In this document: positions 22,025 to 43,765 of the stretch, one piece after another
Numbering within the stretch: position 1 is the stretch's first letter
Layout: each line of letters opens with the position of its first letter
Sequence record: ON286972.1
DNA length: 43,765 bases
Direction: 5' to 3' (one strand)
Position numbers and translations under genes: made by a program
Notes under the pieces: model-generated
Database searches by the model: none
What the model was told of the DNA's origin: nothing
What the model saw: only the letters and a program-made list of their open reading frames with translations

Positions 22025-22037
22025 CTGGAGATATCTA

Positions 22038-22629: not shown

Positions 22630-22639
22630 TGAAAAGTAT

Positions 22640-22667: not shown

Positions 22668-22714
22668 GTTTATCAAGGGGATGAACTTCTCATCCCTACA
22701 ATCGAGGAACTACC

Positions 22715-23266: not shown

Positions 23267-23277
23267 GGATAACTTAT

Positions 23278-23454: not shown

Positions 23455-23493
23455 TATTACGTGATATGTCACGTTAATTAAGTGAGGCGATAA

Positions 23494-23745: not shown

Positions 23746-23754
23746 TTAAAAAAT

Positions 23755-24126: not shown

Positions 24127-24147
24127 TATGTACGCATTGTATAATAA

Positions 24148-24186
24148 AGAAAAGGATTGACTTCAGTCAGCCCTTTTTTCTATAAT
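24148..24186 (+). promoter_or_regulatory. fused terminator/promoter element (copy 7)
   Basis: AAAAGGATTGAC-TTCA-GTCAGCCCTTTTTT-C-TATAAT. Confidence 0.85.
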
Positions 24187-24214
24187 CATTTCATCGAAAC
24201 GAGAGGATGAATAC

Positions 24215-24652
24215 ATGACACGCATTAACTTAGTACATGTTAAAGAACTTGCTGACCAACATCTGATGGCTGAATATCGTGAACTTCCACGTGTGTTTGG
24301 TGCTGTACAAAAACATGTTCAAGCACGTAAGCGTGTACGTGATTTCAAAATTAACAGTACTTATCTGTTAGGTTCAGGTCATGTAACATTCTTCTACGAC
24401 AAGTTACTATACTTACAGAAGCGTCATATTGATATTGTTAACGAATGTTTGCGTCGTGGTATGAAGATTCAAAACACTGAAGTAAACGACATTAGCGGCT
24501 TCCCTGCTGAGTTTTGTAATGACTACGTACCATCGGAGTCCGAGATTAAAACATCACGCGAGCGTTTGATTGAGAAGCTTCAGATGAAGCCTAAGTGGTA
24601 TAAGTTTACTGATGTTGAGCTACCTATATATTATGTTGATATGATACAATGA
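24215..24652 (+). CDS. denV: pyrimidine dimer DNA glycosylase / endonuclease V
   Basis: [35 protein letters not shown] closely follows T4 DenV. Confidence 0.97.
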
Positions 24653-24876
24653 ATGATGAAGAATTCAAAAAATATGCGATTGCGAAGCTTGATTCATACA
24701 AGTCACGCGAAACGTATAAATTTAATCCTGATAAAACAAAAGCATCTATAAGATGGATGATTAATTCACCCAAATATACATTTGACGAAAAATATTCATG
24801 GATAGTGCAATGTAGTGATTATGAGGATTTGGTATATAATATTAAACTGTGTTGGTATGAATACAACAATAAATGA
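24649..24876 (+). CDS. hypothetical protein
   Basis: ATGA coupling. Confidence 0.65.
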
Positions 24877-24879
24877 TAT

Positions 24880-24915
24880 AAGGGGTTGACTTCGGTCAGC
24901 CCTTTTTGCTATAAT
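24880..24915 (+). promoter_or_regulatory. fused terminator/promoter element (copy 8)
   Basis: GGGGTTGAC-TTCG-GTCAGCCCTTTTT-GC-TATAAT. Confidence 0.9.
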
Positions 24916-24941
24916 CATTTCATCAAATTAAGAGGTGATAC

Positions 24942-25181
24942 ATGAAACTATCTTTTATACGTTTAGCAGAATTCTTCGGTACTGATATAATTACTTTACA
25001 ACAAATTGCAGACAATACTTCATTAAGTACACAAGAAGTACTTGACTTAGATGTGATAGAGTGTGATAATACTTCTATCGATTATAAAGAAGGTCTTGTC
25101 GAAAAAGATAAGATTCAGGCTAAGATTAATGGTGCTGGACGGGTTCAGTACTGGAAAGGAGTTTTAAGTCATGCCAGCTAA
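24942..25181 (+). CDS. hypothetical protein
   Basis: GAGG RBS. Confidence 0.7.
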   Translation: MKLSFIRLAEFFGTDIITLQQIADNTSLSTQEVLDLDVIECDNTSIDYKEGLVEKDKIQAKINGAGRVQYWKGVLSHAS

Positions 25182-30981: not shown

Positions 30982-33006
30982 TTATTTGTGTTTTATGTGT
31001 AAAGTGTCTAATATTGTATTGAACAATGATTTAGCAGAAATCATGATTACTTGATCAAAATCTTTAGTATAAGAAATATTAGCAGTACTGGAAGAATCTT
31101 TCACCTCATCCGGTAATGCATCAAACTCTTCTTTTTCCATAATCTTTTCAAGTTCTTCACGAGAAATGGCTTTTACGTTTTCAATAGTCCTTAGTTGTAT
31201 ATTATAATCTTTATAATACGAAACTAAGTTCGTTGCGTATGAACCATCTTTAGATGCTGTTCCAGTAAAATCATAACATCCTGTATCAGTACTAACCCAA
31301 TCGATTTTCCCTGAACTACCACTATATACACCTTTGTTGAACTTAATGTTAACAACATCACCAATAGTTTTCAATATACCACCTTTACATTCATTAAATG
31401 CGTTTAATTGATAACTTGTAGTCATATAGAATTTCGGTTCTAATGTAACAGTATCACCTACAGTTGCTTTCATATCAGAAACACTTAAGAACAATTCATT
31501 AAATCCTTTTGAATAAGTCTTGGTAATTGTTGTTCCATCCCTGTTAGTTACTGTGTATTCTAAGTCCAATTCACAAATACTATTCAATGATAAGTAAGGG
31601 ATATCAAATTTATCAGTACTAGCATCATAAGGACATCTTGAGGATGGTAGTATACCAGTAGGGTTTGGTACGTATTGAACTTTTGTTAACTCATACCCGC
31701 TTGCATTCGCTGGTGTAACTGTAATAGACGGTGTAGATATTCCTTTCATTCCACAGAAGTATATGTTATCTGGAAAATCATTTATTACGAAGTCAGTGAC
31801 AGGAATATCATAAGTATCTTTATCAGTCCAATTAAGAACAACATTAGAACTGGTTGGATCAACAATATGTTCACTAGAACCACAGAAATATACTGATTTG
31901 GTATTAGTAATCATTAGTAATGTTTTGGATGATGAGTTCAATTCAAGAACATCTTTCACTTCAAGACCAGATGGTAATGTCAATGGTAACTTCGTAAATG
32001 ATGTTAAATCTTGTTCATCTTTAACACCACTAGTCCCCGCCGGAAACTTACCTGAACCATAGAAAACACCTTTATTCGTCATGAAATACATGAACGGGGT
32101 TGATGTTCCTTTGTCAAATAGTTGAATGTCATCACATGTTAAACCATCAGGTAAATCCACTTTAGATGGAGTTCTATAAACACCAGGCTTAATACCACCT
32201 TCACCATTACTTACATCACCTAGTACATATAAATCTTTACCTAGTTTCAAGAACATTGATTTATTTTTAGCACACAAGAATGTATCATATGATTTATCAT
32301 CAATTGGTAGCTTGGTATATTCGGTGTATGTAGGCATTGAATCATCAATCCACGAACTATCACCACTAATGTAAATGTGATTGTTTCTGTCAATATAATA
32401 TGAATACACATCAGTACTGTTCATATATAAAGCATTTAGTGCATTTGTTTTCACTAAGTGATTGAACTTAAGAACTTGTTTTCCATCGTACTTATGGGAG
32501 TTGACACCAATATCACCATTTAGGCTACTACCAATTGAATATATATGACCACGTGGTAATAGAACTTGAACACCACTTTTGGTTAAATTATATTTGGAGT
32601 GCAAGAGATCGTTATATACAACTCTAACTTTCTTAAAGATATCAGTACATTCAATCCACGATTTAGATGGTGTACCATCCATTCCTATTATTGCCGGATC
32701 ACCATAATAATAAGCTTTATTTTCATATGATATTTTAAAAGATGATTTACCATCTTTTGTATTAGCACTGAAGTACACATCTTTACTATCTTTAATTGGA
32801 TAAGTACTATTCTCTACAAAAGTATTATATGAGATATCGTTGTTAGCACTATTAAGAACAAAAGAAGTAGATGTACTATTGGACTTATAGACTGCTACGG
32901 AAGATGTATCACTGAAATCAATTTTAGTGAACGTATCTTTGTATGTTTCGTTTAATAATCCTACATAAAAAACATCAGTGCCATCCATCAGTAACGAATA
33001 TAGCAT
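30982..33006 (-). CDS. RCC1-like beta-propeller protein, 3' part of a frameshifted gene
   Basis: LYVLGDVSNGEGG, FYGSG, YFCGS blades; joins 33919 ORF if 4 nt are removed. Confidence 0.65.
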   Translation of the reverse strand: MLYSLLMDGTDVFYVGLLNETYKDTFTKIDFSDTSSVAVYKSNSTSTSFVLNSANNDISYNTFVENSTYPIKDSKDVYFSANTKDGKSSFKISYENKAYYYGDPAIIGMDGTPSKSWIECTDIFKKVRVVYNDLLHSKYNLTKSGVQVLLPRGHIYSIGSSLNGDIGVNSHKYDGKQVLKFNHLVKTNALNALYMNSTDVYSYYIDRNNHIYISGDSSWIDDSMPTYTEYTKLPIDDKSYDTFLCAKNKSMFLKLGKDLYVLGDVSNGEGGIKPGVYRTPSKVDLPDGLTCDDIQLFDKGTSTPFMYFMTNKGVFYGSGKFPAGTSGVKDEQDLTSFTKLPLTLPSGLEVKDVLELNSSSKTLLMITNTKSVYFCGSSEHIVDPTSSNVVLNWTDKDTYDIPVTDFVINDFPDNIYFCGMKGISTPSITVTPANASGYELTKVQYVPNPTGILPSSRCPYDASTDKFDIPYLSLNSICELDLEYTVTNRDGTTITKTYSKGFNELFLSVSDMKATVGDTVTLEPKFYMTTSYQLNAFNECKGGILKTIGDVVNIKFNKGVYSGSSGKIDWVSTDTGCYDFTGTASKDGSYATNLVSYYKDYNIQLRTIENVKAISREELEKIMEKEEFDALPDEVKDSSSTANISYTKDFDQVIMISAKSLFNTILDTLHIKHK

Positions 33007-33919
33007 TTCTATTATTACATAAAGAAGTAATATTTTTTACTACTTTATTTGAATTATAGTTTGGTAACTTCTTTAATCCACGAACAAAATTATCACAAAT
33101 AATACCAGTACCATAGAAGTTATAATCTTTATCACAGTATATAAATGCTGTATCATATGGTGAAGTACTTAAATTCTTATAGAATGGGAATGGAGTGAAT
33201 GTGAATTGTAGAACCTTACGCAATTCCCCTACTGTCTCTGTTGGGAATTGTCTGTTTTTATTATTACCAATAAAAACAACTCTATCTGTTAGGAATGTGT
33301 ACATAATTCCATATGGTTTTACGTACAAATCATTATATCCCAATGATAATTTAGTTGGTGATGTTAGTGGTCCTGAGTTTATTTTGGTTTGATTAATTGA
33401 AAACTCATTAGAATTATAACCAGCCCCATATGTATTACCATTAGTACTTAAATAATATACAGTAGCTTCCCCTGCTCCAAGAAAAGTCTTTACATCAGTT
33501 GCTAACGTTTTTTGGAAAGTTGGATAAAATTTATTATATGTTCCCGTTCCCATCATCAGTTCACCATTGCGGTTATGACCACGAGCATATAGAATACCTT
33601 TGTCTGTATCTAAGAAGAACATACCATTATATGTTTTGTAAATCTTACCTTTTGTAATATCGAAATTGGAAAAATCATCACTAATATCAATGAATATTGT
33701 CTCAAGATTATCTTCAAGGGAGTTTAGAGATTTACCACAATACCATACTGAGTTATCTTTTTTAACAGCAACACAACCACACGGACTGGCATCAAAATAT
33801 GTTACATCGGAAAGAACCAGAGATAAGTTCTTTGTACTGCAATAGTTATCCATTGCATATAAATCGGAATCTTTAAGTATATATACGGAATTCCCAACCG
33901 CTTTAATCGAATTTATCAT
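32975..33919 (-). CDS. RCC1-like beta-propeller protein, 5' part of a frameshifted gene
   Basis: GAGGA RBS before ATG 33919; LYARGHNRNGEL, TYGAGYNS blades. Confidence 0.7.
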   Translation of the reverse strand: MINSIKAVGNSVYILKDSDLYAMDNYCSTKNLSLVLSDVTYFDASPCGCVAVKKDNSVWYCGKSLNSLEDNLETIFIDISDDFSNFDITKGKIYKTYNGMFFLDTDKGILYARGHNRNGELMMGTGTYNKFYPTFQKTLATDVKTFLGAGEATVYYLSTNGNTYGAGYNSNEFSINQTKINSGPLTSPTKLSLGYNDLYVKPYGIMYTFLTDRVVFIGNNKNRQFPTETVGELRKVLQFTFTPFPFYKNLSTSPYDTAFIYCDKDYNFYGTGIICDNFVRGLKKLPNYNSNKVVKNITSLCNNRNAIFVTDGWH

Positions 33920-33983
33920 GTTTATATCCTCATAAATTGATACCAATTCTAATGTATTTACCCACTTAAAGTACAAAAAATGA

Positions 33984-34140
33984 TCAATTAAATGGGGAAT
34001 CTTTAACAAATGAATTCATGATGTACTTGATGAATTGCCCATACCAACGGATTCCTCAGTCCCAGCATACCACATGGTATTATCGAACTTTTTATCATTG
34101 TAGTATCATAACCACACCAAACATCATCAACATTAGTATT
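33984..34140 (-). pseudogene. decayed relic of a propeller-array gene
   Basis: NTNVDDVWCGYDTTMI / KFDNTMWYAG (1-nt shift) / SFVKDSPFN* resemble blade 1 and C-terminus of neighbours. Confidence 0.7.
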
Positions 34141-35491
34141 ACAACAATTGTATTTCTGTGAGTGTTTGATATGTTGTACCGTTGTACACACCTCTCCAAT
34201 ATACCCTACCTTCAGTACTAACCACTAATAATCCATATGTTGTAAACCCAAGAGTACCACCAACATACATAGCATCTTTAATTCGAATACCAATGTCTTC
34301 ATATGTAAATGAAGCGACTGCTCCCGCTTGCCACGAAGGACTAGCGTAGTAATCACTATAAACACCATGTGCTTTATATATTGATGTTGTTCCTGGTTCA
34401 AAAATTACAGTTCCACAGTAGTTCATTCGTATTTTAGTACTGGATGAAGTCGGTACATTTATACCTATGCCATCTTTTATCCCTGTAGTTAGGACGTTAA
34501 AACCACCCGCCACACGGTTGACGTCATTCTCACCGATTAAAAACATACCAACGTTGTAGCCCATATAATATACACTGCTACTGCCATTCCAGAAAGAAAA
34601 ACCACCACCATTACCACAGCGATATAGTTGTGAATTTGAGCAGTACATCATACCTTCGTTTGTCGCATCAAATTCATCTGCTGTTCCTATTGTAGCTACA
34701 GTAGTCCACGTTTTAATCACTTGGTTTGTACTAGCTGGTGTTTGTATACCATATCGTATATTATATCCCTTACCAACGATTGTACCATCTTCTAATTTAG
34801 CATAAAGTACAGGTCTATTACCAACAAAATACATATTATTGTGTGACATGTCTATTGTGCATCTTAATGAAACTACTTTTTGTGTCAATTGATTATCTTT
34901 AGTAAAAGAAGTAAAGTAGTAATCCGATGTTGAGTTGTTTATTAAACCTTGTATTGACAATCCCATATACCAGATTTCACCATTGCTGTTTAATGCTGCC
35001 AAAATACAACTATATTTTGAAGTGTATGCTGGTGATGTTGTTGAAGTTGCTGGTCCTTTATCATATCCACCACAGAATACCATCTCCACAACTTCACCTA
35101 CGTTCGAAAAATAAGAAGATACATTGATAAAACCATTTGTTATAAAAGGTGCTGTATTCATACTTGAATGTGTGAATATCCCATTTGCATATACACCACA
35201 AAAATGATATGAACCATCATTATCTTGGACTATTATTCCATTTGATAGTAACCAAAAATTGTTTACATTTTTTCTTACTAATTCAACTCCTGCACCATTG
35301 GTTGGTGTTATACCAAAAGAAACATATTTTGTTTGACCAATACCATATAAATTTCCATTAGTTGCTAGTATTGCACCAAACCAGTTCCCACCACCATTCC
35401 TATCATGACCCATACCAATGGAGTCAAATTTCTTCACAGTAGGGACTTCAACTTTATTCCCATACTCTAGCATTCTAACAAAAGGTAACAT
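34139..35491 (-). CDS. MLPFVRM-leader RCC1-like beta-propeller protein (450 aa)
   Basis: true start at MLPF with AAGGAGG RBS; LYGIG, IWYMG, VYWRG blades. Confidence 0.85.
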   Translation of the reverse strand: MLPFVRMLEYGNKVEVPTVKKFDSIGMGHDRNGGGNWFGAILATNGNLYGIGQTKYVSFGITPTNGAGVELVRKNVNNFWLLSNGIIVQDNDGSYHFCGVYANGIFTHSSMNTAPFITNGFINVSSYFSNVGEVVEMVFCGGYDKGPATSTTSPAYTSKYSCILAALNSNGEIWYMGLSIQGLINNSTSDYYFTSFTKDNQLTQKVVSLRCTIDMSHNNMYFVGNRPVLYAKLEDGTIVGKGYNIRYGIQTPASTNQVIKTWTTVATIGTADEFDATNEGMMYCSNSQLYRCGNGGGFSFWNGSSSVYYMGYNVGMFLIGENDVNRVAGGFNVLTTGIKDGIGINVPTSSSTKIRMNYCGTVIFEPGTTSIYKAHGVYSDYYASPSWQAGAVASFTYEDIGIRIKDAMYVGGTLGFTTYGLLVVSTEGRVYWRGVYNGTTYQTLTEIQLL

Positions 35492-35555
35492 ATATCCTCC
35501 TTTATTCATTATATTATATTTAATCAAAAAAGAAAAGCCAGTACAGAGTACTGGC
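35460..35555 (-). repeat. array junction repeat 1 (hairpin, T-tract, TAAATA, RBS, leader codons)
   Basis: GCCAGTAC-TCT-GTACTGGC TTTTCTTTTTTGATTAAATATAATATAATGAATAAAGGAGG..ATGTTACCTTTTGTTAGAATG. Confidence 0.95.
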
Positions 35556-35566
35556 ATTTAAAATAA

Positions 35567-36742
35567 TCAAAATGTAGGAAGTTTGAATTCTCTCATAACA
35601 GATGAACTGCTTGCAGATACATTATCTGGTGATTTCCCTGCGTAGTATAATTTATTATCAATGAACATATACAATGTTGCATCATTTCCTGCTACAAGTG
35701 ATTCACTTTTCTTAAATTTAACACCACTAGGTAAAATTGCTTCAACAAATGAACCTGATTCTCTTGTAGTATTATTTGCCAATTGACCATTGTTATTATA
35801 ACCAGTACTATAAATTTTACCTGAACTATAATATACGAGTCCACGAGTACTAGTGTTTTCTATTCGAATGAATTCACTATCATCTGGGACTGTAGTTGAT
35901 AGAACTGGGTTTAACTTATAAGCAGATGATACATTATTATTACCCAATTGACCATAACCTTGAAAGCCTAGTGTATACATAGGACATGATTCTGGTGTGC
36001 CTTTTGTTATAATACCAATATAATTCACACTACAAAAAATGTCTATTGCTTCTGTAATAGGTGTACCCTTATATTGAACCCAAGGGAATACATACGATTG
36101 TTGCTTACCATTTCCCAAAGTACCGGAAGTTGTTGTCCCAGTACGCCACATTGTATCATCAAGTTTAATAATCCAGTTAGCTGTCGTTATCGATGAACAG
36201 AATTTTTTAACATTATCCACTAAAAATGTAAATTGATTATAATATGATGCAGTGTTTATACCAAACTTAGCACCAGTATTATCACCTAACAAATATAAAC
36301 TATTATCTGTACCTAAAATCAAAGCATAATCATAACCCACGTATATATCTTTAATTCTTGAAATTCCAAATTGTGTAAAATAGCTTGTACATTCTGTGAA
36401 TGTTGTTATATTATTGGTTGTATTATTACCTAGCCATTTATCTAAACCACTATAAAAGAATCTATCATCATTTGTGCGTATTAGACAAAAAGCGTTCATT
36501 GTACTGCACCAAAAATCTTTAACATTGCTATATATTTTTGTCCATTCAGTTACTGCATTAGTATGACCTAAACCAAAAATTCCACCATTCTGAAGACCAA
36601 TAGCCCATATTGAACCATTTTTATCAAGCATCATTGTACATGTATGTGAATAACCACCCGATGGTGTAACTAATTTAACAAAATTGGGAATATATGGTAA
36701 AACTTTATTTCCATAATCCAACATTCTAACAAAAGGTAACAT
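35567..36742 (-). CDS. MLPFVRM-leader RCC1-like beta-propeller protein (391 aa)
   Basis: IWAIGLQNGGIFGLG, YTLGFQGYGQLGN, YSTGYNNNGQLAN. Confidence 0.9.
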   Translation of the reverse strand: MLPFVRMLDYGNKVLPYIPNFVKLVTPSGGYSHTCTMMLDKNGSIWAIGLQNGGIFGLGHTNAVTEWTKIYSNVKDFWCSTMNAFCLIRTNDDRFFYSGLDKWLGNNTTNNITTFTECTSYFTQFGISRIKDIYVGYDYALILGTDNSLYLLGDNTGAKFGINTASYYNQFTFLVDNVKKFCSSITTANWIIKLDDTMWRTGTTTSGTLGNGKQQSYVFPWVQYKGTPITEAIDIFCSVNYIGIITKGTPESCPMYTLGFQGYGQLGNNNVSSAYKLNPVLSTTVPDDSEFIRIENTSTRGLVYYSSGKIYSTGYNNNGQLANNTTRESGSFVEAILPSGVKFKKSESLVAGNDATLYMFIDNKLYYAGKSPDNVSASSSSVMREFKLPTF

Positions 36743-36809
36743 AATTCCTCCTTTATTCATTATACTATATTTAATCAAAAAAGAAATGCCAGCATCAAGT
36801 ACTGGCATT
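36710..36809 (-). repeat. array junction repeat 2
   Basis: same unit, hairpin with one mismatch. Confidence 0.95.
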
Positions 36810-36813
36810 ATTG

Positions 36814-38004
36814 TTATAGTTGTCTTGGTGTATCAAGTACATATCTATTTGTACTAGGACCACCATCATCATACGTTCCGGTTGAATATATATTTTTCAT
36901 ATCAGCAGTTAGAAAAGTACGATACGAACCGCGATATATTTTTATTTTATCATACATAGAATATGATATTTCTGCTGGCATTGGACATATAGTAAATCTA
37001 CCAATAGTAACATTAGAACCAACACCCAACGAACCAGCATAACTACTCGCATTTAAACCAGTTGCATATACACCAGTACTCGTAACTAGTATACTAGATT
37101 GTGTTGGGTATCCTGTATGAATTGAATACAAAGTTCCAGTTGGTAATGTCGTACTATTGCTCCCTAATACAGCAAGTGCCGAACTGGTTGTGGTATTGTT
37201 ACCCCATGCACCATTACTCGCTAAACCACCAACTAGAAACTGACGTGCACCAGTACTTGGATTCTCAACCAAAGCACTGACTGCACCACTTGAGCATCCA
37301 GTGTATTGTAACGTTTTTGTGTATGTTGTACTTGGTTTATATAAAGTATATTCATTAAATGGTGTCCATGTGGTACTGGTACTTATACCTGACGTACCAC
37401 CACCAATATATAAATTATTTTGTGTATCAAAAAACATTACACAGTTATTTGTTGACTGTATTTGTGCAATATCAACATTAGGCGTGACAGCTTTTACAAA
37501 TGATCCATCTGTTATTTGTTGAGTACTACCAGTACCATCAGCGAATTGTCTAGCCCCACTCCAACCAGTACTCCATATTGTATTATTATCCATTAATACC
37601 GTAAACCACGTAGTACCTCCATACATCTGTTTAATTGAAGTACTTGAACTTTGCGTGTACAAATTTTCAATATATTGGTTATAACTTAAAAACGTAGTAG
37701 TACTAGTTGGTAAACCAATATGATCACCATATCCACAATAAAAATAATTTGAGTCATTATCTTGTACTAACAAAGTTCCTTGTGACACCCAGAAATCTTT
37801 AACATTTTCTCTAATTAAGGTCCATGACTTTACTGCATTACTATTTCCTATACCAAACTTCCCAAAACTATTATTTCCACGTGCGTATAGTTGACCATCC
37901 GTATAAAGAACGACAACATCTAAATCAGTTGGTGTTATTTTCTTAATTTGAATAGGGACTGGTGTTATATTCCCATAATCAAACATTCTAACAAAAGGTA
38001 ACAT
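36814..38004 (-). CDS. MLPFVRM-leader RCC1-like beta-propeller protein (396 aa)
   Basis: LYARGNNSFGKFGIG, VYATGLN..GSLGVG. Confidence 0.9.
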   Translation of the reverse strand: MLPFVRMFDYGNITPVPIQIKKITPTDLDVVVLYTDGQLYARGNNSFGKFGIGNSNAVKSWTLIRENVKDFWVSQGTLLVQDNDSNYFYCGYGDHIGLPTSTTTFLSYNQYIENLYTQSSSTSIKQMYGGTTWFTVLMDNNTIWSTGWSGARQFADGTGSTQQITDGSFVKAVTPNVDIAQIQSTNNCVMFFDTQNNLYIGGGTSGISTSTTWTPFNEYTLYKPSTTYTKTLQYTGCSSGAVSALVENPSTGARQFLVGGLASNGAWGNNTTTSSALAVLGSNSTTLPTGTLYSIHTGYPTQSSILVTSTGVYATGLNASSYAGSLGVGSNVTIGRFTICPMPAEISYSMYDKIKIYRGSYRTFLTADMKNIYSTGTYDDGGPSTNRYVLDTPRQL

Positions 38005-38069
38005 ATTTCCCTCCTTTATTCATTATACTATATTTAATCAAAAAAGAAAAGCCAGTATCAAGTACTGGC
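37972..38069 (-). repeat. array junction repeat 3
   Basis: same unit; hairpin 38051-38069. Confidence 0.95.
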
Positions 38070-38075
38070 CTATAT

Positions 38076-39245
38076 TTAAACTGGTGAATCTAATACAAAT
38101 TCTAAACTACTAATGCCACCATATGTGACATTTGTCCCTGTGCTATATACAAAATTACCATCAGTTATATAAGTTCGGTTATACCCACCTGCCATCTGCG
38201 ACTTACTATAATCAAACCCATCAGGAACGATTGCTTTGGTATATACTAATGCATTATTAGATGTACCAATACCTAACATACCAGCTCCTGAAGATTTATT
38301 GTAGCCGCAACAATATATACCATCTGTTGTAGCAATAACTTGGTTATAATATGAAGTAATGTTAGCAATGCTTACTACATCACCGGGTGGCATTAGTGAA
38401 GCAGTTTGAACCTCAAATGCTCTATAATCACTGAGAGAACCATTTATCCCATCTGCTTGTGCACCAAATATTCTCGAACCGCCATTTGCGATGATGGTTT
38501 TACCAGTGGGATCAGTACCAATTGCCATTGCCATTGAAGTACTATTCTCCATATAGTACTTGATATTAATTGTATTTCTTAAGCTGGTAGGAGCACCATA
38601 ATATATAGTATATAACTTACCTCCTGAACTTGTAACTGCATTTACTCTTCCTGTATAAAATAGCCATCCTTGGTTTGTAACATAACCGTGCATTAAATTA
38701 CTTGCAAACAATTTAACAGGTAATTGATCTGCTGCGGTCGGAACAGTACTTTTGACGAATTTTCTAGCAACATTGTTAGTTGTTGTCCCATCACCCAACT
38801 GACCATCACCCCCTGCTCCAGTACTCCATATTGTTTGGTCTGTTAGTAATACACTTGTAGTCTGATAACTAACTGCTATATCTAATATTGGTAATGTTAA
38901 CGTATCGAATGTTGGCATAGCAGAAGTCCATATTGATACTGCTGCCCCTGGCATACCAACAGTTGTTGAACTTCCACTGTACCATATTTCATCATTGCTT
39001 TTCTTAATAACTATCGACGTGGCTCCCATCCAAAAATCTTGAACATCAGAAGTGCTAAAAGTCCATGTAGTAACAATATTTTTGTGACCTAAACCCAAAA
39101 GACCATTTGTATTCTCACCACGCACATATAAATCACCACTGTTTGTTAAAACAGCAACATTATAGTTGTTAGCTAGTATTTTTTTAATATTTGGTTTAGC
39201 AGGTGCAATATTCCCATACTCTAACATTCTTACAAAAGGTAACAT
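38076..39245 (-). CDS. MLPFVRM-leader RCC1-like beta-propeller protein (389 aa)
   Basis: LYVRGENTNGLLGLG, IWSTGAGGDGQLGDG. Confidence 0.9.
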   Translation of the reverse strand: MLPFVRMLEYGNIAPAKPNIKKILANNYNVAVLTNSGDLYVRGENTNGLLGLGHKNIVTTWTFSTSDVQDFWMGATSIVIKKSNDEIWYSGSSTTVGMPGAAVSIWTSAMPTFDTLTLPILDIAVSYQTTSVLLTDQTIWSTGAGGDGQLGDGTTTNNVARKFVKSTVPTAADQLPVKLFASNLMHGYVTNQGWLFYTGRVNAVTSSGGKLYTIYYGAPTSLRNTINIKYYMENSTSMAMAIGTDPTGKTIIANGGSRIFGAQADGINGSLSDYRAFEVQTASLMPPGDVVSIANITSYYNQVIATTDGIYCCGYNKSSGAGMLGIGTSNNALVYTKAIVPDGFDYSKSQMAGGYNRTYITDGNFVYSTGTNVTYGGISSLEFVLDSPV

Positions 39246-39309
39246 AATTCCTCCTTTATTCATTATATTATATTTAATCCAAATAAGAAAGCCAGTATCA
39301 AGTACTGGC
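39210..39309 (-). repeat. array junction repeat 4
   Basis: same unit; hairpin 39291-39309. Confidence 0.95.
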
Positions 39310-39315
39310 ATTGTG

Positions 39316-40425
39316 TTATTTCGGTAAATCAATTTTAGTAAAGACTGCAACATCCTCGCTTGCACCGGGAATGGCGTAATACGTTCCAGTACTATATACA
39401 TCTCCATTTTTGGTTAATATTGAAGTCAAACCATCACTAAAAAGAACATCCCTAATCTCACTAACTTCAACGGGTAATTGTAAATTTGTAGCACTATATA
39501 TAGCACCAGTTTGAGAATTGTTTAATCCCAAACCACGGTTCGCCCCAACACCCTTCTGATATGTACTGGTAATTACCATTTGTGTAGCAGTATTTAATGC
39601 AGGTGAATTCGTCATAAACAACGGAGAACTATTAGGCAAAGTACTTACAGGAACTGCACGGAATGTAGTCGTACCTGAACTAAGAAAGTTTGGAGTTTGA
39701 CCACATACGAAATATGATGTACCATTATAGTAATTAAATGCATTACCACCAATCGCTGCATCGATTACACCAGAACTACGTAATCCCCAAGTGTTAATTT
39801 GTGTTTGGTCCCCTGTACCATGCTGCCCACTGCTATTCCATCCAGAACTATATAGCTTATTATCTAATGTAATATACATACTATCATTTGCATTAGTCAT
39901 TACTTTACGCACGTTAGTAGCACATTGAGTTAATGTGTAAATCGATGATGAGCCAATACCTAAAGAACCACGATATCCATTATCTCCTGCACCATAGAGT
40001 ACTGAACTAGTGCTAAGTACAAATATTAAACCATTTGTACATACAATATTAGCAATTTCACTCACTGGTATAGCATTGGTAAACCAATTAGTCCTTTCAA
40101 CTAATATAGTACTGTAAGAAGTAGTTGTAGAAGATGAGAACCAGTACGTTTCACCCGATGTCCATATCGTATTATCATTTTTAATAATAACAAGTGTACG
40201 ACCACCCACGAAAAAATTAGAAACATCTGAACTTACTAATATCCATGAAGATACCGTGTTGTTATTACCATTTCCAGATTCACCACCTTGATTTCTACCT
40301 ATGTAATATAAATCATGTGAATCAGTCAATAAGAATTGACCCTGTGTAGAAGCACCAACTTTAATTATATTTTTAGGACCGGGTACAATATTCCCGTACA
40401 CTAACATTCTTCCAAAAGGTAACAT
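39316..40425 (-). CDS. MLPF-leader RCC1-like beta-propeller protein (369 aa)
   Basis: LYYIGRNQGGESGNG, LYSSGWNSSGQHGTG. Confidence 0.9.
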   Translation of the reverse strand: MLPFGRMLVYGNIVPGPKNIIKVGASTQGQFLLTDSHDLYYIGRNQGGESGNGNNNTVSSWILVSSDVSNFFVGGRTLVIIKNDNTIWTSGETYWFSSSTTTSYSTILVERTNWFTNAIPVSEIANIVCTNGLIFVLSTSSVLYGAGDNGYRGSLGIGSSSIYTLTQCATNVRKVMTNANDSMYITLDNKLYSSGWNSSGQHGTGDQTQINTWGLRSSGVIDAAIGGNAFNYYNGTSYFVCGQTPNFLSSGTTTFRAVPVSTLPNSSPLFMTNSPALNTATQMVITSTYQKGVGANRGLGLNNSQTGAIYSATNLQLPVEVSEIRDVLFSDGLTSILTKNGDVYSTGTYYAIPGASEDVAVFTKIDLPK

Positions 40426-40490
40426 AATTCCTCCTTTATTCATTATACTATATTTAATACAAAAAAGAAAAGCCAGTACTCTGTACTGGC
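40390..40490 (-). repeat. array junction repeat 5
   Basis: same unit; hairpin 40472-40490. Confidence 0.95.
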
Positions 40491-40498
40491 ATATTACA

Positions 40499-41641
40499 TT
40501 ATTTCCACGGTAGAAGTGAATCAGGAACTCTGGTTGGTACTCTAACGGCTGGAACATTTCCAAGTTCAGGTAAACCACTCATATACAAATTGTTATTTTC
40601 ATCAATTATCATTGAATAGAAATTATCAATTACGAAGCCTGAAATTCGTCTTCCTTCTAATGCATCAAGAACCATTTCGGTGAAAGTTAGTATATTTTCG
40701 GATGTTTGATTAACACCACATGCACCATAGGTATTTCGACCACAAGTATATAACTTATTATTATTTTTAACAACACATCCATTCCCTTCGTTGTTGGATA
40801 AACCACCCACCAACTCTATTTCACCTTGGAATGATAAATTGGGAATTAATGTACTCATTGGTACTGCTGATACTGTACCTACACCAGCTTGACCATATGC
40901 ATTTGGTGAAGCAACCTTCACTGAACCATCATTAAGAAATATATATGAAGTACGGTATGTATTTACAGCTTGTATAGCATTGGTGATAGTATTGTCTTTT
41001 GTAAAACTTAATATATTTGATGTTTTTGTACTACCAGGAGCAACAGTATTTCCTGCATACCAATAGGAGCCATCATCAAGTACTAACCCAGTACTGAGCA
41101 AAGAACAGCCATAACTTTTAACATTTTCTATAGTGCTGTATCTGAACGATGTGACATTAGCTGTTGACGCGTTACCAAATACACCACCTTCGCCAGAACC
41201 ACAGTAGAACCATTTTCCATTTTTTAAAAATACACGCAAATTCTGCCCAACAGCAATACCATCAATATCATCAGCACTGACACCAAAATCAGTGAAGTAC
41301 TGGGTTACATCAATCCAAACCCCATTTGTATTTGTTCCGATTTGTGGCATTACTATACTAGCACCTGTGAACCAAATAGTTCCATCATTCTTAATGGCAA
41401 TGGAACCAAGAACACCACCCCAGTAACGTTCAATATTATTATTCACACGGGTCCATACGGTGGATGATTGTAATGAACCATTACCACCTTGTCCAAATGA
41501 AGATGAACCATACCAGTACAAGTCACCATTAACATGCAAATAAAAACGAGTATTATAATTTGCTTGTAATCTATTTTTAAATAGAGGTTTTGGTTCCGGT
41601 GCAATATTCCCGTACTCTAACATTCTAACAAAAGGTAACAT
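40499..41641 (-). CDS. MLPFVRM-leader RCC1-like beta-propeller protein (380 aa)
   Basis: LYWYGSSSFGQGGNG, LYTCGRNTYGACGV. Confidence 0.9.
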   Translation of the reverse strand: MLPFVRMLEYGNIAPEPKPLFKNRLQANYNTRFYLHVNGDLYWYGSSSFGQGGNGSLQSSTVWTRVNNNIERYWGGVLGSIAIKNDGTIWFTGASIVMPQIGTNTNGVWIDVTQYFTDFGVSADDIDGIAVGQNLRVFLKNGKWFYCGSGEGGVFGNASTANVTSFRYSTIENVKSYGCSLLSTGLVLDDGSYWYAGNTVAPGSTKTSNILSFTKDNTITNAIQAVNTYRTSYIFLNDGSVKVASPNAYGQAGVGTVSAVPMSTLIPNLSFQGEIELVGGLSNNEGNGCVVKNNNKLYTCGRNTYGACGVNQTSENILTFTEMVLDALEGRRISGFVIDNFYSMIIDENNNLYMSGLPELGNVPAVRVPTRVPDSLLPWK

Positions 41642-41710
41642 AATTTCCTCCTTTATTCATTATACTATATTTAATACAAATAAGAAATGCCAGTACTCTG
41701 TACTGGCATT
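41600..41710 (-). repeat. array junction repeat 6
   Basis: same unit; 11-bp stem 41686-41710. Confidence 0.95.
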
Positions 41711-41713
41711 ATA

Positions 41714-42856
41714 TTATTTCCACGGTAGAAGTGAATCAGGAACCCTTGTCGGTACATTTGTAGTAGACACCCCATCAAGATTTGGTACACCGCATGTATA
41801 TAAATTATCAGCATCGTCAACTAACATCGTATAGTTATATCCCCTACAAAAACTACTAACATTACGACCTTCTAATGCAGTAAGAATCATTTCAGTGAAT
41901 GTTGTTATATTTGTCGAGGTTGAACCAACACCACATTGTCCATTTGAATTAAGACCACATAAAAATAACTTATTATCATTTTTAATTATACAGGATGGTC
42001 CAGTAAGGTTTGTACCAAGCTCACCCACTAACTCTATTTCACCTTGGAATGCTAAATTTGGAATTAATGTACTCATAGGGGCTGGTGTTGTATTCCCAGT
42101 ACCTGCTTGACCACGTTCGTTGGAAGATGCAACTTTAACTGTTCCATCACTAAGAAATATATAGGAAGTTTCAATTGTATTGACTGCTTTAATTGCAGTG
42201 CTGATAGAAGTTTCTTGTGTAAATCTTAGCACGTTTTGTGCTGACGTTCCCGATATAAACGTATTACCTGCATACCAATATGTACCATCATTGAGTACTA
42301 ATGCAGTACTTCGAATTGCACAACCAGCACTTCGAACATTTTCTATAGTACTGTACGTGAATTGTGAAACGCTTGCCGATGAACCATTTCCGAATACACC
42401 ACCACTCCCAGCACCACAGAAGAACCACTTTCCATTTTTCAAAAATACACGCATACACGCAGATATAACAATACTATCAATATCATCAGCACTGACACCG
42501 AAATCAGCAAAGTGCGATGTCACATCAACCCAAACACCGTTAGTGTTTGATGCAATTACTGGAATAACAGAACTTGTACCAGTGTACCAAATAGTACCAT
42601 CTTTCTTTATCGCTATTGTTCCTTGAACACCACCCCAATATCGTACAACATTTGTATTGACGAGAGTCCATGCGGTTGAAGAGTTCAATGAACCATTACC
42701 ACCTTGACCATATGATGAAGAACCAAACCAATATAGATTACCATTGGTGTGTAAATAAAATTTGGCATCTGCCGAGCATTGTAACCTATTTTTTAATCGT
42801 GGTGCGGGTTCCGGTGCAATATTCCCGTACTCTAACATTCTAACAAAAGGTAACAT
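41714..42856 (-). CDS. MLPFVRM-leader RCC1-like beta-propeller protein (380 aa), close paralog of 40499 gene
   Basis: same length, identical first 17 and last 12 residues. Confidence 0.9.
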   Translation of the reverse strand: MLPFVRMLEYGNIAPEPAPRLKNRLQCSADAKFYLHTNGNLYWFGSSSYGQGGNGSLNSSTAWTLVNTNVVRYWGGVQGTIAIKKDGTIWYTGTSSVIPVIASNTNGVWVDVTSHFADFGVSADDIDSIVISACMRVFLKNGKWFFCGAGSGGVFGNGSSASVSQFTYSTIENVRSAGCAIRSTALVLNDGTYWYAGNTFISGTSAQNVLRFTQETSISTAIKAVNTIETSYIFLSDGTVKVASSNERGQAGTGNTTPAPMSTLIPNLAFQGEIELVGELGTNLTGPSCIIKNDNKLFLCGLNSNGQCGVGSTSTNITTFTEMILTALEGRNVSSFCRGYNYTMLVDDADNLYTCGVPNLDGVSTTNVPTRVPDSLLPWK

Positions 42857-42868
42857 AATTCCTCCATA

Positions 42869-43765
42869 TTATTTAAAAACATACTGCGTATTAACACGAG
42901 TGCCATTGTCAAAACCAAGTACATAAAATATCTCAGCACTATTCTTAGAACCAAATAACGCACCAGTACTACTACTCAAAGTAGTATTAACCGCTAAGGG
43001 AATCCATATGTCTTCTTCTGCATCGTATCTCAATAAATTTAATGCACCATACGACACTGCATATATATTTTTATCATATGTACTGTAACATATTTTACTA
43101 GGGTTATTACCACCAACTGGTGCTATGTTAGACCACACCGCACTTTGTATATGATATTTTTGTGCAGTACTAGTACCTTGACCAGTAATATATATGTAAG
43201 TACCATCCGTACACATATCACCACCTCCATTGTTATTTGTTCCATCACTTGTACCTAATGATGACCATGTATTAGTACTTGGAGTATAACTGTATAACGA
43301 ATTATTAGTAGGCGAACCCCACAAATATATCTTATCCCCAGCAGTAATCATCTTACTATACGCCAGTTGACTAGGCTTCCCAATACTGTTAGTGTTCAGA
43401 ATCCATGTATTTGTACTTATATTATATACATAAAAATTATTACTACTATTACCTGAACCACCAAACAAATATATTTTTCCCTGATAAGCACATAACGCAC
43501 TACCAAATGTAGATACAGGTGCATTGGCTAATTGTGACCACGTTCTTGTAGTTAAATTAAAACTCCATAACTGATTATCCGTCTGCACCGCATTCTGTAT
43601 ACCACCAAATATATAAGCAATATTACTTTCCGCATCATACGTATAACCAAAGTTATTTCGTGCTGAAGGTACTGGTGATGTAGTAAATTGTGTTCGTACT
43701 CCACCATTTGGGCCAGGTAATGGACCTACATTCCCGAACTCAAACATTCTTACAAAAGGTAACAT
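42869..43765 (-). CDS. MLPFVRM-leader Kelch-repeat beta-propeller protein (298 aa)
   Basis: YIFGG, IYLFGG, LWSFNLTTRTWSQL, YVYNISTNTW Kelch motifs; ATG is the last codon of the window. Confidence 0.9.
   Translation of the reverse strand: MLPFVRMFEFGNVGPLPGPNGGVRTQFTTSPVPSARNNFGYTYDAESNIAYIFGGIQNAVQTDNQLWSFNLTTRTWSQLANAPVSTFGSALCAYQGKIYLFGGSGNSSNNFYVYNISTNTWILNTNSIGKPSQLAYSKMITAGDKIYLWGSPTNNSLYSYTPSTNTWSSLGTSDGTNNNGGGDMCTDGTYIYITGQGTSTAQKYHIQSAVWSNIAPVGGNNPSKICYSTYDKNIYAVSYGALNLLRYDAEEDIWIPLAVNTTLSSSTGALFGSKNSAEIFYVLGFDNGTRVNTQYVFK

What the first reader, a model, noticed from the sequence alone, without database searches (positions are those of the whole stretch)
35460..41710. Repeated ~105-bp junction unit with fixed 70-75-nt spacing: possible recombination/shuffling site
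Seen: six junctions have intergenic lengths of 75, 71, 71, 70, 73 and 72 nt. Each has the same order: GCCAGTAC-NNN-GTACTGGC-type hairpin, T-tract, TTAAATA, TATAAT, AAAGGAGG, then ATG TTA CCT TTT G.. AGA ATG. The identity extends to synonymous codon positions, while the gene bodies share little DNA identity. Every gene is therefore a self-contained unit with its own terminator, promoter and RBS. Inference: the DNA repeat is kept homogeneous by, or used for, recombination that adds, deletes and reorders cassettes (integron-like logic without a visible integrase).
Basis: partly seen in the sequence, partly recalled or inferred. Interest (0 to 1): 0.8.

Follow-up and report, generated by a model that had tools for sequence, protein, structure and literature searches.

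The report
Recombining junction repeat in phage array
Between the tandem beta-propeller genes of the jumbo coliphage A4 sits a repeated ~105-bp terminator-promoter-ribosome-site-leader unit, and ten related phages show that whole genes are lost, gained, swapped and reordered by recombination inside this unit, much as with the 'PeSL' cassettes of T4-type phages.

Summary
The window is the end of Escherichia phage A4 (Asteriusvirus, 355 kb). On the minus strand lie eight tandem genes, seven RCC1-like and one Kelch-like. Six junctions of 75/71/71/70/73/72 nt carry the same hairpin, T-tract, TAAATAT-nn-TATAAT, AAGGAGG and ATG TTA CCT TTT.

The units are 91% identical to each other. The gene bodies are at random-alignment level (61% against a 59% baseline; 22% amino-acid identity).

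In ten relatives, copy number (8-13 leader-bearing cassettes) and order both differ: 97 junctions give 63 different adjacencies. Of 684 homology-block ends, 668 lie within -110..+70 of a start codon. All 14 clean three-way recombinants switch parent between -68 and +46. Codons 5-12 evolve in concert within each genome.

The 'integron-like' part is not supported. Crossovers are spread over the whole unit, hairpin-less junctions also recombine, and a relative is reported to have no integrase but to encode a RecA-type recombinase.

Best reading: a functional regulatory and leader-peptide cassette that also serves as ~100 bp of portable homology for general recombination. This is a PeSL-like device, here extended into the coding sequence and serving virion beta-propeller genes. 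It is a new variant of a known kind.

The parts
35492..35566 (-). Junction 1 (75 nt) between A4_239 and A4_238: hairpin 35537-35555, T-tract 35523-35536, TAAATATAATATAAT 35508-35522, AAGGAGG 35496-35502
36743..36813 (-). Junction 2 (71 nt) between A4_240 and A4_239: hairpin 36788-36806, T-tract 36774-36787, TAAATATAGTATAAT 36759-36773, AAGGAGG 36747-36753
38005..38075 (-). Junction 3 (71 nt) between A4_241 and A4_240: hairpin 38051-38069, T-tract 38037-38050, promoter motif 38022-38036, AAGGAGG 38010-38016
39246..39315 (-). Junction 4 (70 nt) between A4_242 and A4_241: hairpin 39291-39309, T-tract 39277-39290, promoter motif 39262-39276, AAGGAGG 39250-39256
40426..40498 (-). Junction 5 (73 nt) between A4_243 and A4_242: hairpin 40472-40490, T-tract 40457-40471, promoter motif 40442-40456, AAGGAGG 40430-40436
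41642..41713 (-). Junction 6 (72 nt) between A4_244 and A4_243: hairpin 41689-41707, T-tract 41674-41688, promoter motif 41659-41673, AAGGAGG 41647-41653
42857..42868 (-). Short junction 7 (12 nt, RBS only, no hairpin or promoter) between the Kelch-like A4_245 and A4_244; this pair is probably co-transcribed
34139..35491 (-). Cassette O (A4_238, 450 aa), a divergent RCC1-like protein. Its leader codons 1-12 at 35456-35491 belong to the repeat unit
35567..36742 (-). Cassette G (A4_239, 391 aa), an RCC1-like beta-propeller; leader codons at 36707-36742
36814..38004 (-). Cassette B (A4_240, 396 aa), RCC1-like; leader codons at 37969-38004
38076..39245 (-). Cassette K (A4_241, 389 aa), RCC1-like; leader codons at 39210-39245
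39316..40425 (-). Cassette A (A4_242, 369 aa), RCC1-like; leader codons at 40390-40425
40499..41641 (-). Cassette J (A4_243, 380 aa), RCC1-like. The AlphaFold model is a beta-propeller with residues 1-19 unstructured. Leader codons at 41606-41641
41714..42856 (-). Cassette F (A4_244, 380 aa), RCC1-like; has the same leader codons but is preceded by the short junction
42869..43765 (-). Cassette Q (A4_245, 298 aa), a Kelch-repeat propeller carrying the same MLPFVRM..GN leader. It is the first gene of the array. Its promoter lies across the record end (A4 record 1-60): the same T-tract plus TTGATTAAATATAGTATAATGAATAAAGGAGG, with no intact hairpin

Best explanation
Each junction is a compact working regulatory cassette with two roles.

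Role 1, regulation. The unit has four parts:
- an intrinsic terminator for the upstream gene;
- a T-tract that is also the upstream part of a phage-type promoter (TAAATAT-nn-TATAAT, no -35);
- a strong Shine-Dalgarno sequence;
- the first ~12-15 codons, which encode a common N-terminal leader (MLPFxRMxxYGN) predicted to be a flexible extension outside the propeller.
This leader probably acts as a shared virion-docking or targeting peptide.

Role 2, recombination. The same ~105-115 bp precede almost every gene of the array, so they act as portable homology. General homologous recombination occurs within one genome, between sister copies in concatemers, and between co-infecting relatives. The likely enzyme is the phage's RecA/UvsX-type system.

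A crossover anywhere between the hairpin and about codon 15 deletes, duplicates, replaces or re-inserts a whole gene. The gene stays correctly terminated, promoted, translated and leader-tagged. The same exchanges homogenise the unit (concerted evolution).

What is shown: the anatomy; variable number and order among relatives; breakpoints confined to the unit; mosaic ancestry of the A4 cassettes; within-genome homogenisation.

What is inferred: promoter and terminator activity; the timing and sigma factor of the promoter; the recombination enzyme; excised circles; the role of the leader peptide.
For: Anatomy and terminators.

The head-of-array promoter keeps the T-tract and TAAATAT..TATAAT while the right arm of the hairpin has decayed. 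So the T-tract belongs to the promoter, and the hairpin is kept only where there is an upstream gene to terminate.

Cassette orders in 10 phages differ. The 97 junctions make 63 distinct adjacencies among 29 orthogroups, and cassette B has 7 different upstream neighbours.

Ends of inter-genome homology blocks: 589/600 lie within -110..+60 of a start codon. Under relaxed thresholds 668/684 lie within -110..+70. Most of the rest are at the array end or only 1-16 nt beyond the zone, and there is only one intragenic breakpoint pair.

Segment linkage: the last 30 nt of the upstream gene follow the upstream cassette (0.88 against 0.50). Codons 17-22 follow the downstream cassette (0.88 against 0.42). 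Everything from the hairpin to codon 4 is equally similar (0.81-1.00) whatever the neighbours.

All 14 clean three-way recombinants switch parent between -68 and +46. Worked example: the 121Q F|B junction equals SP27/PBECO4 F|C up to the RBS or codon 14, and C|B after that, which is a precise loss or gain of cassette C.

Concerted evolution of codons 5-12: 0.840 within genomes against 0.797 between them, with 0 of 1000 permutations reaching this. The MLEY variant occurs in four A4 cassettes and in no other genome.

A4 cassettes have different nearest relatives: J is 98.7% identical to 121Q and G17, G and B are 96% to PBECO4, O is 94% to EC.P1, and Q is 93% to Turkey5.

A Kelch propeller carries the same leader as the RCC1-like ones. 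The leader is outside the predicted fold.

RCC1-like proteins are in the phAPEC6 virion by mass spectrometry (PMC7247149). Relatives encode RecA/UvsX and no integrase (PMC11895373; PMC5259590). The PeSL precedent is in PMC2839356.
Against: Everything is comparative.

The promoter has no -35 and its class is unresolved.

Nucleotides 1-12 of the CDS are invariant in all 107 cassettes. Recombination alone does not explain this. Selection on RNA or translation, or on the peptide plus codon choice, must contribute.

Of 117 candidate three-way comparisons only 14 were clean. The others have more than 3 discordant sites, meaning divergence or multiple events.

Gene-boundary changes in divergence can also arise from different evolutionary rates of neighbouring genes, though that does not explain the changed order.

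The structure model is shallow (7 sequences, pLDDT 72.5), so 'leader is disordered' is weak evidence.
Confidence: 0.75

Rival explanations
1. Integron-like site-specific recombination. The GCCAGTAC...GTACTGGC hairpin would be an attC-like site, cut and rejoined by a dedicated (unseen) recombinase or nuclease, and the rest of the unit would merely be carried along.
For: The specific stem sequence is conserved in all canonical junctions of 36 phage records, although any GC-rich stem would terminate. The same palindrome CAGTACTG is about 45-fold over-represented across the window, as if it were a recognised site. About a third of the mapped crossover intervals include the hairpin or T-tract.
Against: Crossover intervals are spread from -68 to +46, and at least 8 of the 14 lie wholly downstream of the hairpin, in the RBS or leader codons. 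RBS-only junctions with no hairpin still exchange partners: E|A against E|K, I|R against I|P and I|O, T|A against T|B. Pfam found no integrase or recombinase domain in the ten larger non-array ORFs of the window that were scanned. The related phage Sharanji is reported to lack an integrase. At the head of the array the right arm of the hairpin has decayed while the promoter is intact, as expected of a terminator.
Confidence: 0.07
2. Pure functional constraint. The unit would be conserved only because terminator, promoter, RBS, open initiation region and leader peptide are each under purifying selection after tandem duplication. Recombination at the unit would be incidental or negligible, and the array differences among phages would arise by other means.
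For: Every element has an obvious function. The predicted 5' mRNA region is no more structured than shuffled controls (z +0.4 to +1.3). Nucleotides 1-12 of the CDS never vary, which looks like selection rather than conversion. Hairpin loops and spacers do vary.
Against: This does not explain why 668/684 homology-block ends lie within -110..+70 of a start codon, almost all of them in the unit. It does not explain why informative sites switch parent inside the unit. It does not explain why codon 5-12 variants are shared by non-orthologous cassettes of one genome but not by orthologues elsewhere. It does not explain the fixation of rare codons such as GGG (9% usage).
Confidence: 0.12
3. Assembly artefact. 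Short-read assemblers might have mis-joined cassettes across the repeat, so that the different orders in database genomes are not real.
For: Repeats are a classic cause of mis-assembly. Several records (121Q, PBECO4, Ecwhy_1 which is marked 'UNVERIFIED') contain frameshifted cassette fragments.
Against: The shared unit is only ~105 bp at ~90% identity. That is shorter than typical reads and much shorter than insert sizes (my own reasoning, not a tool result). Independent isolates share long identical sub-orders, for example B-H-D-L-I-R-P in SP27 and phAPEC6, and C-U..M..A-N-V-B-G in Ecwhy_1 and EC.P1. Cassette presence or absence, and different nearest relatives per cassette, cannot be produced by mis-ordering.
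Confidence: 0.03

Closest known systems
PeSLs (promoter-early stem-loops) of T4-type phages (Arbiol et al. 2010, PMC2839356; Comeau et al. 2014, PMC4122927)
   Same: Both are a ~100-bp composite of stem-loop terminator, promoter, Shine-Dalgarno and start codon, repeated at the borders of variable genes. Indels and replacements between close relatives are bounded by the motif. The proposed mechanism is homologous recombination between copies, so that each moved gene carries its own promoter and terminator (compared).
   Different: Here the promoter has no sigma-70 -35 and is not of the early type. The same phage has a separate early-type PeSL-like repeat (TTGACA/TTGCA-17-TATAAT plus a GGGGGAA..TTCCCC stem-loop) in the neighbouring region. 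The stem-loop is a canonical terminator upstream of the promoter, and its U-tract doubles as promoter upstream sequence. The homology runs ~36-45 nt into the coding sequence and encodes a shared leader peptide. The genes are paralogous virion beta-propellers, not ORFans. The host genome is a Rak2-like jumbo phage. Mini-circles were not tested.
Integron gene-cassette arrays (attC sites plus IntI)
   Same: Both are a tandem array of single-gene cassettes separated by hairpin-capable repeats, with cassette content and order varying among relatives.
   Different: Pfam found no integrase or recombinase domain in the ten larger non-array ORFs of the window that were scanned, and none is reported in the related phage Sharanji. 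Crossovers are not at a fixed point. Each cassette has its own promoter rather than sharing a Pc. The hairpin is a perfect terminator stem followed by a T-tract. Hairpin-less junctions also recombine.
Phage 'morons' (autonomous promoter-gene-terminator units; established knowledge from the lambdoid phages HK97/HK022)
   Same: Each gene is a self-contained transcription unit flanked by its own promoter and terminator.
   Different: Morons are isolated, unrelated insertions. Here the flanks are one repeated sequence that itself mediates exchange, and the genes are paralogues.
Conserved N-terminal anchor modules of phage tail fibres and tailspikes with swappable distal domains (established knowledge)
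   Same: A conserved 5' coding segment is shared by otherwise unrelated receptor-type proteins and serves as a crossover point for module exchange. RCC1-like and Kelch propellers share one leader.
   Different: The shared part is only ~12-15 residues and is continuous with the non-coding regulatory repeat. An anchoring function is not shown.
Concerted evolution of tandem multigene families by unequal crossing-over and gene conversion
   Same: Within-genome homogenisation of a repeat (codons 5-12) together with copy-number change.
   Different: Only the ~105-bp junction is homogenised. The gene bodies stay highly divergent.

Membership tests
PeSL-type recombinogenic regulatory cassette | Composite of a stem-loop and a promoter, ending in SD and start codon, within about 100 bp of intergenic DNA | tested here: met
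   Six junctions of 70-75 nt with hairpin, T-tract, TAAATAT-nn-TATAAT, AAGGAGG and ATG. Definition from PMC2839356.
PeSL-type recombinogenic regulatory cassette | Many copies per genome, concentrated in a variable (hyperplastic) region | tested here: met
   8 places in A4, all in this array. 3-13 places in each of 36 Asteriusvirus records. The array is the region that varies among relatives.
PeSL-type recombinogenic regulatory cassette | The promoter is a strong sigma-70-consensus early promoter (-35 and -10) | tested here: not met
   Perfect -10 (TATAAT) but no acceptable -35 in the scan. The early-type consensus promoters of the same phage look different. Activity and timing were not measured.
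PeSL-type recombinogenic regulatory cassette | Insertions, deletions and replacements between close relatives are bounded by the motif | tested here: met
   668/684 homology-block ends lie within -110..+70 of a start codon. 14/14 clean recombinant triples switch inside the unit. Worked example.
PeSL-type recombinogenic regulatory cassette | Excised mini-circles carrying one gene and one chimeric motif | not testable with these tools
   Needs reads or outward PCR on phage DNA.
Integron | Tyrosine-recombinase integrase (IntI) adjacent to the array | tested here: not met
   Pfam gave no recombinase or integrase domain in the ten larger non-array ORFs of the window that were scanned. The Sharanji genome paper reports no integrase. 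The whole A4 genome was not scanned here.
Integron | Recombination at a fixed point in an imperfect attC hairpin | tested here: not met
   Crossover intervals range from -68 to +46, and most lie outside the hairpin. Hairpin-less junctions also exchange partners.
Integron | Promoterless cassettes expressed from a common Pc | tested here: not met
   Every canonical junction carries its own promoter-like motif.
RCC1-like / Kelch beta-propeller proteins (the cargo) | Pfam RCC1 or RCC1-like domain, or Kelch repeats | tested here: met
   PF25390, PF00415 or PF13540 in six cassettes. Kelch families in A4_245. A4_238 matches only by PHROG 4219. The model is a propeller.
Intrinsic (Rho-independent) terminator | GC-rich stem-loop followed by a U-tract on the coding strand, directly after a stop codon | tested here: met
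   Six of six were called by the scan. Stems of 7-11 pairs with hairpin-dominated centroid structures at -10 to -17 kcal/mol. The G17 record annotates the homologous sites as terminators. Function was not assayed.

The most novel reading that the evidence does not exclude
The unit may be more than passive homology. It could be a selected 'plug-and-play' diversification device for the virion surface. The leader-encoding junction would let any beta-propeller (RCC1-like or Kelch) be dropped into the array and automatically receive a terminator, a late-type promoter, an RBS and a common docking peptide. Exchange would be actively stimulated at the CCAGTAC...GTACTGG palindrome, whose unsplit form CAGTACTG is about 45-fold over-represented across the genome, by a phage nuclease or DNA-binding protein. 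Clonal lysates would then be mixtures of array variants and packaged mini-circles.
Probability: 0.12. Interest if true: 0.8.

Novelty: new variant of a known kind. Interest (0 to 1): 0.5.

Why it matters
This extends PeSL-type 'mobile regulatory cassette' shuffling from the ORFan regions of T4-type phages to a jumbo (Rak2-like) phage. It also shows a version in which the homology continues into the coding sequence, so that a shared leader peptide is exchanged together with promoter, terminator and RBS.

That gives a concrete and testable explanation for several things: how Asteriusviruses maintain and reshuffle 8-13 or more divergent virion-associated beta-propeller genes; why copy number differs between isolates used for phage therapy; and where to cut and paste when engineering such arrays.

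It also flags the RCC1-like proteins, annotated as 'DNA condensation proteins', as a fast-evolving modular set. That pattern fits surface or host-interaction functions better than DNA condensation.

Tried and rejected
1. A scan of IMG/VR for the leader motif returned only phage 121Q itself and one chance match inside an unrelated ORF (L012). It gave no extra arrays.

2. A sigma-70 promoter scan of the array gave no more hits than shuffles and did not call the junction promoters. I therefore dropped the idea that they are ordinary early sigma-70 promoters.

3. My first hairpin search pattern had the wrong spacing and found nothing useful. The hairpins are documented instead.

4. A maximal-order Markov test for palindromes was uninformative, because the sub-words are themselves enriched. 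The dinucleotide-shuffle result is the one used.

5. I considered whether the leader is the 'velcro' strand closing the propeller. The model leaves residues 1-19 unstructured, so this was rejected, though only weakly.

6. I considered a T4-like capsid-targeting or protease-cleaved leader (my own recollection of the T4 cleavage motif, not a tool result). The L-x-E-like motif of A4 (RMLE) is not kept in relatives (RMVK, RLFD), so I did not pursue it.

7. I considered conserved mRNA structure at the start. The folds are no better than shuffles.

8. The longer ORFs that read through the junction from an ATG in the hairpin are products of the mechanical ORF listing. The annotated starts with the strong SD are used.

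9. Literature searches found no paper describing this junction unit in Asteriusviruses. They found only the paralogue array itself (PMC7247149, PMC5259590).

Full report
WHAT THE WINDOW IS. A megablast of the region finds it 100% identical to Escherichia phage A4 (ON286972.1, genus Asteriusvirus, 355,528 bp). The window is the last 43,765 bp of that record. The finding region lies in a run of ten minus-strand genes, A4_236 to A4_245. Eight of them (A4_238-A4_245) begin with ATGTTACCTTTTG..AGAATG, encoding MLPFxRM. This 21-nt motif occurs 8 times against 0.00 expected. Six of the eight match Pfam RCC1 or RCC1-like families. A4_238 matches only PHROG 4219 ('regulator of chromosome condensation'). 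The first gene, A4_245, is a Kelch-repeat propeller.

CHECK OF THE OBSERVATION. The annotated intergenic lengths are exactly 75, 71, 71, 70, 73 and 72 nt. Read on the coding strand, each junction is: stop codon, a few bases, GCCAGTAC-(3-5 nt)-GTACTGGC, a T-tract (TTTTCTTTTTTG-like), (G/T)ATTAAATATA(G/A)TATAAT, GAATA, AAGGAGG, 4-6 nt, ATG TTA CCT TTT G.. AGA ATG.

All six hairpins are called terminator-like on the coding strand. They fold as the dominant structure, with centroids at -10 to -17 kcal/mol.

The 104-nt unit from hairpin to codon 12 is 90.6% identical on average (minimum 87.5%). The gene bodies are 60.7% identical in global alignment, against 59.2% when one partner is shuffled. Body amino-acid identity averages 22%.

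The synonymous claim holds, and non-preferred codons are fixed. CCT accounts for 33% of Pro codons in the bodies, AGA for 38% of Arg and GGG for 9% of Gly.

Two corrections apply. The junction between the Kelch gene and the next gene (42857-42868) is only 12 nt with an RBS. The promoter has no recognisable -35.

IS THE UNIT GENOME-WIDE OR ARRAY-SPECIFIC? A blastn search with one unit finds 334 places in 36 phage records. All are Escherichia or Salmonella Asteriusviruses, with 3-13 places per record and 8 in A4, about one per cassette of this array. The promoter motif TAAATATnnTATAAT occurs nowhere else in the window except for one 1-mismatch site.

The neighbouring, divergently transcribed block of small ORFs lies in A4 record 6-25 kb, outside the window. 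It carries a different repeat: TTGACA/TTGCA, 17 nt, TATAAT, then a GGGGGAA..TTCCCC stem-loop and an SD. That repeat looks like the classical early PeSL design.

The promoter of the first array gene wraps to the start of the record. It has the same T-tract and TTGATTAAATATAGTATAATGAATAAAGGAGG but no intact hairpin. In relatives this head region still shows the left arm (ACCAGTACTGAAA...) with a decayed right arm. Two conclusions follow. The T-tract is part of the promoter, and the hairpin is maintained only where an upstream gene must be terminated. This supports ordinary terminator and promoter functions.

I fetched the arrays of nine relatives: 121Q, phAPEC6, UE-S1, PBECO4, G17, Turkey5, SP27, Ecwhy_1 and EC.P1. 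I found every leader-bearing cassette and grouped the cassette bodies at 70% or more DNA similarity into 29 orthogroups. The orders, 5' to 3' on the coding strand, are:
- A4: Q F J A K B G O
- 121Q: C J A F B H C D L I
- phAPEC6: X J A E K B H D L I R P
- UE-S1: C S M A D H B G Y
- PBECO4: E A F C B N D G
- G17: Z E A K C J B H L a I P
- Turkey5: E A Q F K N M T B D I O b
- SP27: c E A F C B H D L I R P
- Ecwhy_1: C U M E A N V B G D W
- EC.P1: C U S M T A N V B G O W

Number and order both vary. The 97 junctions make 63 distinct adjacencies, and cassette B has seven different upstream neighbours.

Ends of inter-genome homology blocks (85% identity or more, 300 nt or longer) fall within -110..+60 of a start codon in 589 of 600 cases, and none fell further than about 150 nt from a start codon. 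That zone is about 14% of a cassette's length. With relaxed thresholds (80% or more, 200 nt or longer), 668 of 684 fall within -110..+70. Most of the exceptions are at the 3' end of the array or 1-16 nt beyond the zone. One pair is a true intragenic breakpoint (phAPEC6 cassette X against G17, at about +320).

The A4 cassettes also have different nearest relatives:
- J is 98.7-98.8% identical to 121Q, phAPEC6 and G17.
- F is only 85.6% identical to 121Q and 73% to phAPEC6 and G17.
- B and G are 96% identical to PBECO4.
- K is 96% identical to G17.
- O is 94% identical to EC.P1.
- Q is 93% identical to Turkey5.
The array is therefore a mosaic assembled by exchange between phages, not only by local deletion.

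WHERE EXACTLY ARE THE CROSSOVERS? I split 75 canonical junctions into segments and compared pairs by shared neighbours.
- The last 30 nt of the upstream gene follow the upstream cassette only (0.88 against 0.50).
- Codons 13-16 and 17-22 follow the downstream cassette (0.78 and 0.88, against 0.51 and 0.42).
- Hairpin, T-tract, promoter, leader RNA and codons 1-4 are equally similar (0.81-1.00) in every category.
- Codons 5-12 are only weakly linked to the downstream cassette.

For junction X|Y present in one phage, I looked for X|Z and W|Y in another and aligned the three. Of 117 such triples, 14 were clean (3 or fewer discordant informative sites). In all 14 the parental switch lies between -68 and +46.

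A worked example: the 121Q F|B junction is identical to SP27 or PBECO4 F|C through the RBS spacer (with PBECO4, through codon 14). It is identical to C|B from there on. This is a precise loss or gain of cassette C by a crossover inside the unit.

RBS-only junctions also exchange partners, with switches at -5..-3 or -5..+46 (for example I|P against I|R plus R|P, and T|A against T|B). So the RBS plus leader codons are enough homology without any hairpin.

HOMOGENISATION. Codon 5-12 variants track genomes rather than orthogroups. MLEY occurs in four A4 cassettes and in no other genome. LFDY occurs in 7 of 13 Turkey5 cassettes and in several of Ecwhy_1 and EC.P1. MVKY dominates in 121Q, phAPEC6 and SP27.

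Non-orthologous cassettes are more alike within a genome than between genomes (0.840 against 0.797). When sequences were permuted among orthologues, 0 of 1000 permutations reached this difference. This is concerted evolution by conversion or crossing-over.

Nucleotides 1-12 of the CDS never vary in 107 cassettes. That needs selection as well, on the peptide plus codon choice or on the mRNA. Other genes of the phage start quite differently, so it is not a general initiation rule. The start region is no more structured than shuffles.

MECHANISM. The data fit general homologous recombination on ~100 bp of portable homology.
- Crossovers are spread across the unit.
- There is no fixed point.
- A hairpin is not required.
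- Pfam found no integrase or recombinase domain in the ten larger non-array ORFs of the window that were scanned.
- The Asteriusvirus Sharanji is reported to lack an integrase and to encode recombinase A (PMC11895373).
- The Rak2-like phage CBB has uvsX, uvsW, gp46/47 and endonuclease VII homologues (PMC5259590).

Recombination between two direct units would delete a gene and, by inference, release a circle. Unequal exchange between sister or co-infecting genomes would duplicate, replace or re-insert one. Every product keeps a terminator, promoter, RBS and leader.

This is the PeSL model of Arbiol et al. (PMC2839356) and Comeau et al. (PMC4122927).

PROMOTER CLASS AND CARGO. All promoter variants share TAAATA, 3-5 nt, TA(T/G)AAT. 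This holds for the canonical form, the head-of-array form GGGTAAATATGATATAAT, the M/S-type TGTAAATACATTATAAT, and GGGTAAATACATTAGAAT in front of A4_237. Relatives CBB and GAP32 have a predicted late motif ATAAATA resembling T4's TATAAATA (PMC5259590).

RCC1-like proteins are found in phAPEC6 virions by mass spectrometry (PMC7247149). A middle or late phage-specific promoter is therefore likely, but this is not shown. A phage sigma-70-family gene lies in the window (8174-9136) and is a candidate factor.

The AlphaFold model of A4_243 is a beta-propeller (pLDDT 72.5, pTM 0.77, 7-sequence alignment) whose residues 1-19 are unstructured. Together with the Kelch protein carrying the same leader, this suggests a shared docking or targeting peptide. 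That is an inference.

COMPARISON AND NOVELTY. The unit works like a PeSL. It meets four of the PeSL features tested but not the 'sigma-70 early promoter' feature, and mini-circles could not be tested. It differs in four ways: it extends into the coding sequence, it serves paralogous virion propellers, it is array-specific, and it sits in a jumbo phage.

It is not an integron: integrase, fixed crossover point and common promoter were all tested and not met.

The paralogue array itself is known (PMC7247149, PMC5259590). Some database records annotate the terminators or a 'repeat_region'. I found no paper describing the junction as a recombination unit.

The integron analogy is wrong in mechanism. 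This is a new variant of a known kind, of moderate interest.

CAVEATS. All evidence for recombination is comparative. Only 14 of 117 triples were clean. Some deposited arrays may contain sequencing errors, seen as frameshifted cassettes. Expression, termination, circles and leader function remain untested.

Noticed in passing
whole window (e.g. 2018, 11064, 25146, 41089); junction hairpins at 35537-35555 etc.: The palindrome CAGTACTG occurs 24 times against 0.54 expected from dinucleotide shuffles. AGTACT occurs 122 times against about 15. The sites are evenly spread and lie mostly inside coding regions. The junction hairpin is this palindrome split by a loop (CCAGTAC-nnn-GTACTGG). A strongly over-represented palindrome in a lytic phage is unexplained. 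It could be a binding, nicking, modification or packaging site.
   Followed up: partly
L002 (A4 record 6,000-25,000, just beyond the window end if the genome is circularly joined): The divergently transcribed block of about 50 small ORFs carries its own intergenic repeat: AAAAAGTACTTGCA/TTGACA, 17 nt, TATAAT, then a GGGGGAA..TTCCCC stem-loop, an SD and ATG. This is a classical early PeSL-like cassette. So the phage has two different families of repeated regulatory junctions.
   Followed up: partly
window 8174-9136 (+): A 320-aa phage-encoded sigma-70-family factor. It has clear regions 2 and 3 but only a weak region 4 match (E 0.0023). It is a candidate factor for the -35-less TAAATAT..TATAAT promoters of the array.
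   Followed up: partly
window 42869-43765 (-): The first gene of the array is a Kelch-repeat propeller, not RCC1-like. It carries the same MLPFVRM..GN leader with the same codons. In Turkey5 its orthologue sits in the middle of the array.
   Followed up: yes
window 30982-34009 (-): A4_236 (674 aa) and A4_237 are weakly RCC1-like (Pfam PF25390 E about 1e-7, PHROG 4219). They lack the MLPF leader and the canonical junction. A4_237 is preceded by a variant promoter-like GGGTAAATACATTAGAAT at about 33945-33962, and there is no hairpin after A4_238.
   Followed up: partly
junctions, e.g. 35492-35566 (-): In a read-through transcript the terminator's U-tract (CUUUUCUUUUUU) is predicted to pair with the downstream AAAGGAGG Shine-Dalgarno (MFE structures). 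Transcripts started at the junction promoter would lack the U-tract. Codons 3-4 (CCU UUU) are also complementary to AAAGG. Both are weak predictions. They might explain the fixed CCT codon or a bias against translating read-through RNA.
   Followed up: no
relatives: L005 UE-S1, L008 Turkey5, L010 Ecwhy_1, L011 EC.P1 (after cassettes M and S): A second junction type follows cassettes M and S. It has a different hairpin (ACCAGTACTGAAATATGTGCTGGT), promoter (TGTAAATACATTATAAT) and weak SD (GGAGAT). There is also a class of RBS-only junctions: E|A, Q|F, I|R, I|P, T|A, L|a. The array is therefore a mix of monocistronic and probably bicistronic units.
   Followed up: partly
L004 phAPEC6 cassette 1 (X) against L007 G17: This is the only intragenic homology breakpoint found, about 320 nt into a cassette. 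It is a possible chimeric propeller gene.
   Followed up: no
window 34139-35557, 35567-36808, 38076-39407, 39316-40578 (-): The mechanical ORF list extends four cassettes upstream through the junction. The junction is open in frame from an ATG or GTG in or before the hairpin (MPVL..SFLIKY.IMNKGG.MLPF). There is no SD there, and the annotated starts are the MLPF ATGs. This is probably meaningless, but the open frame recurs.
   Followed up: no
L003 121Q, L006 PBECO4, L010/L011: Several cassettes in relatives are split by frameshifts into fragments of 59-68 aa (annotations). They are either pseudogenes or sequencing errors in older assemblies.
   Followed up: no
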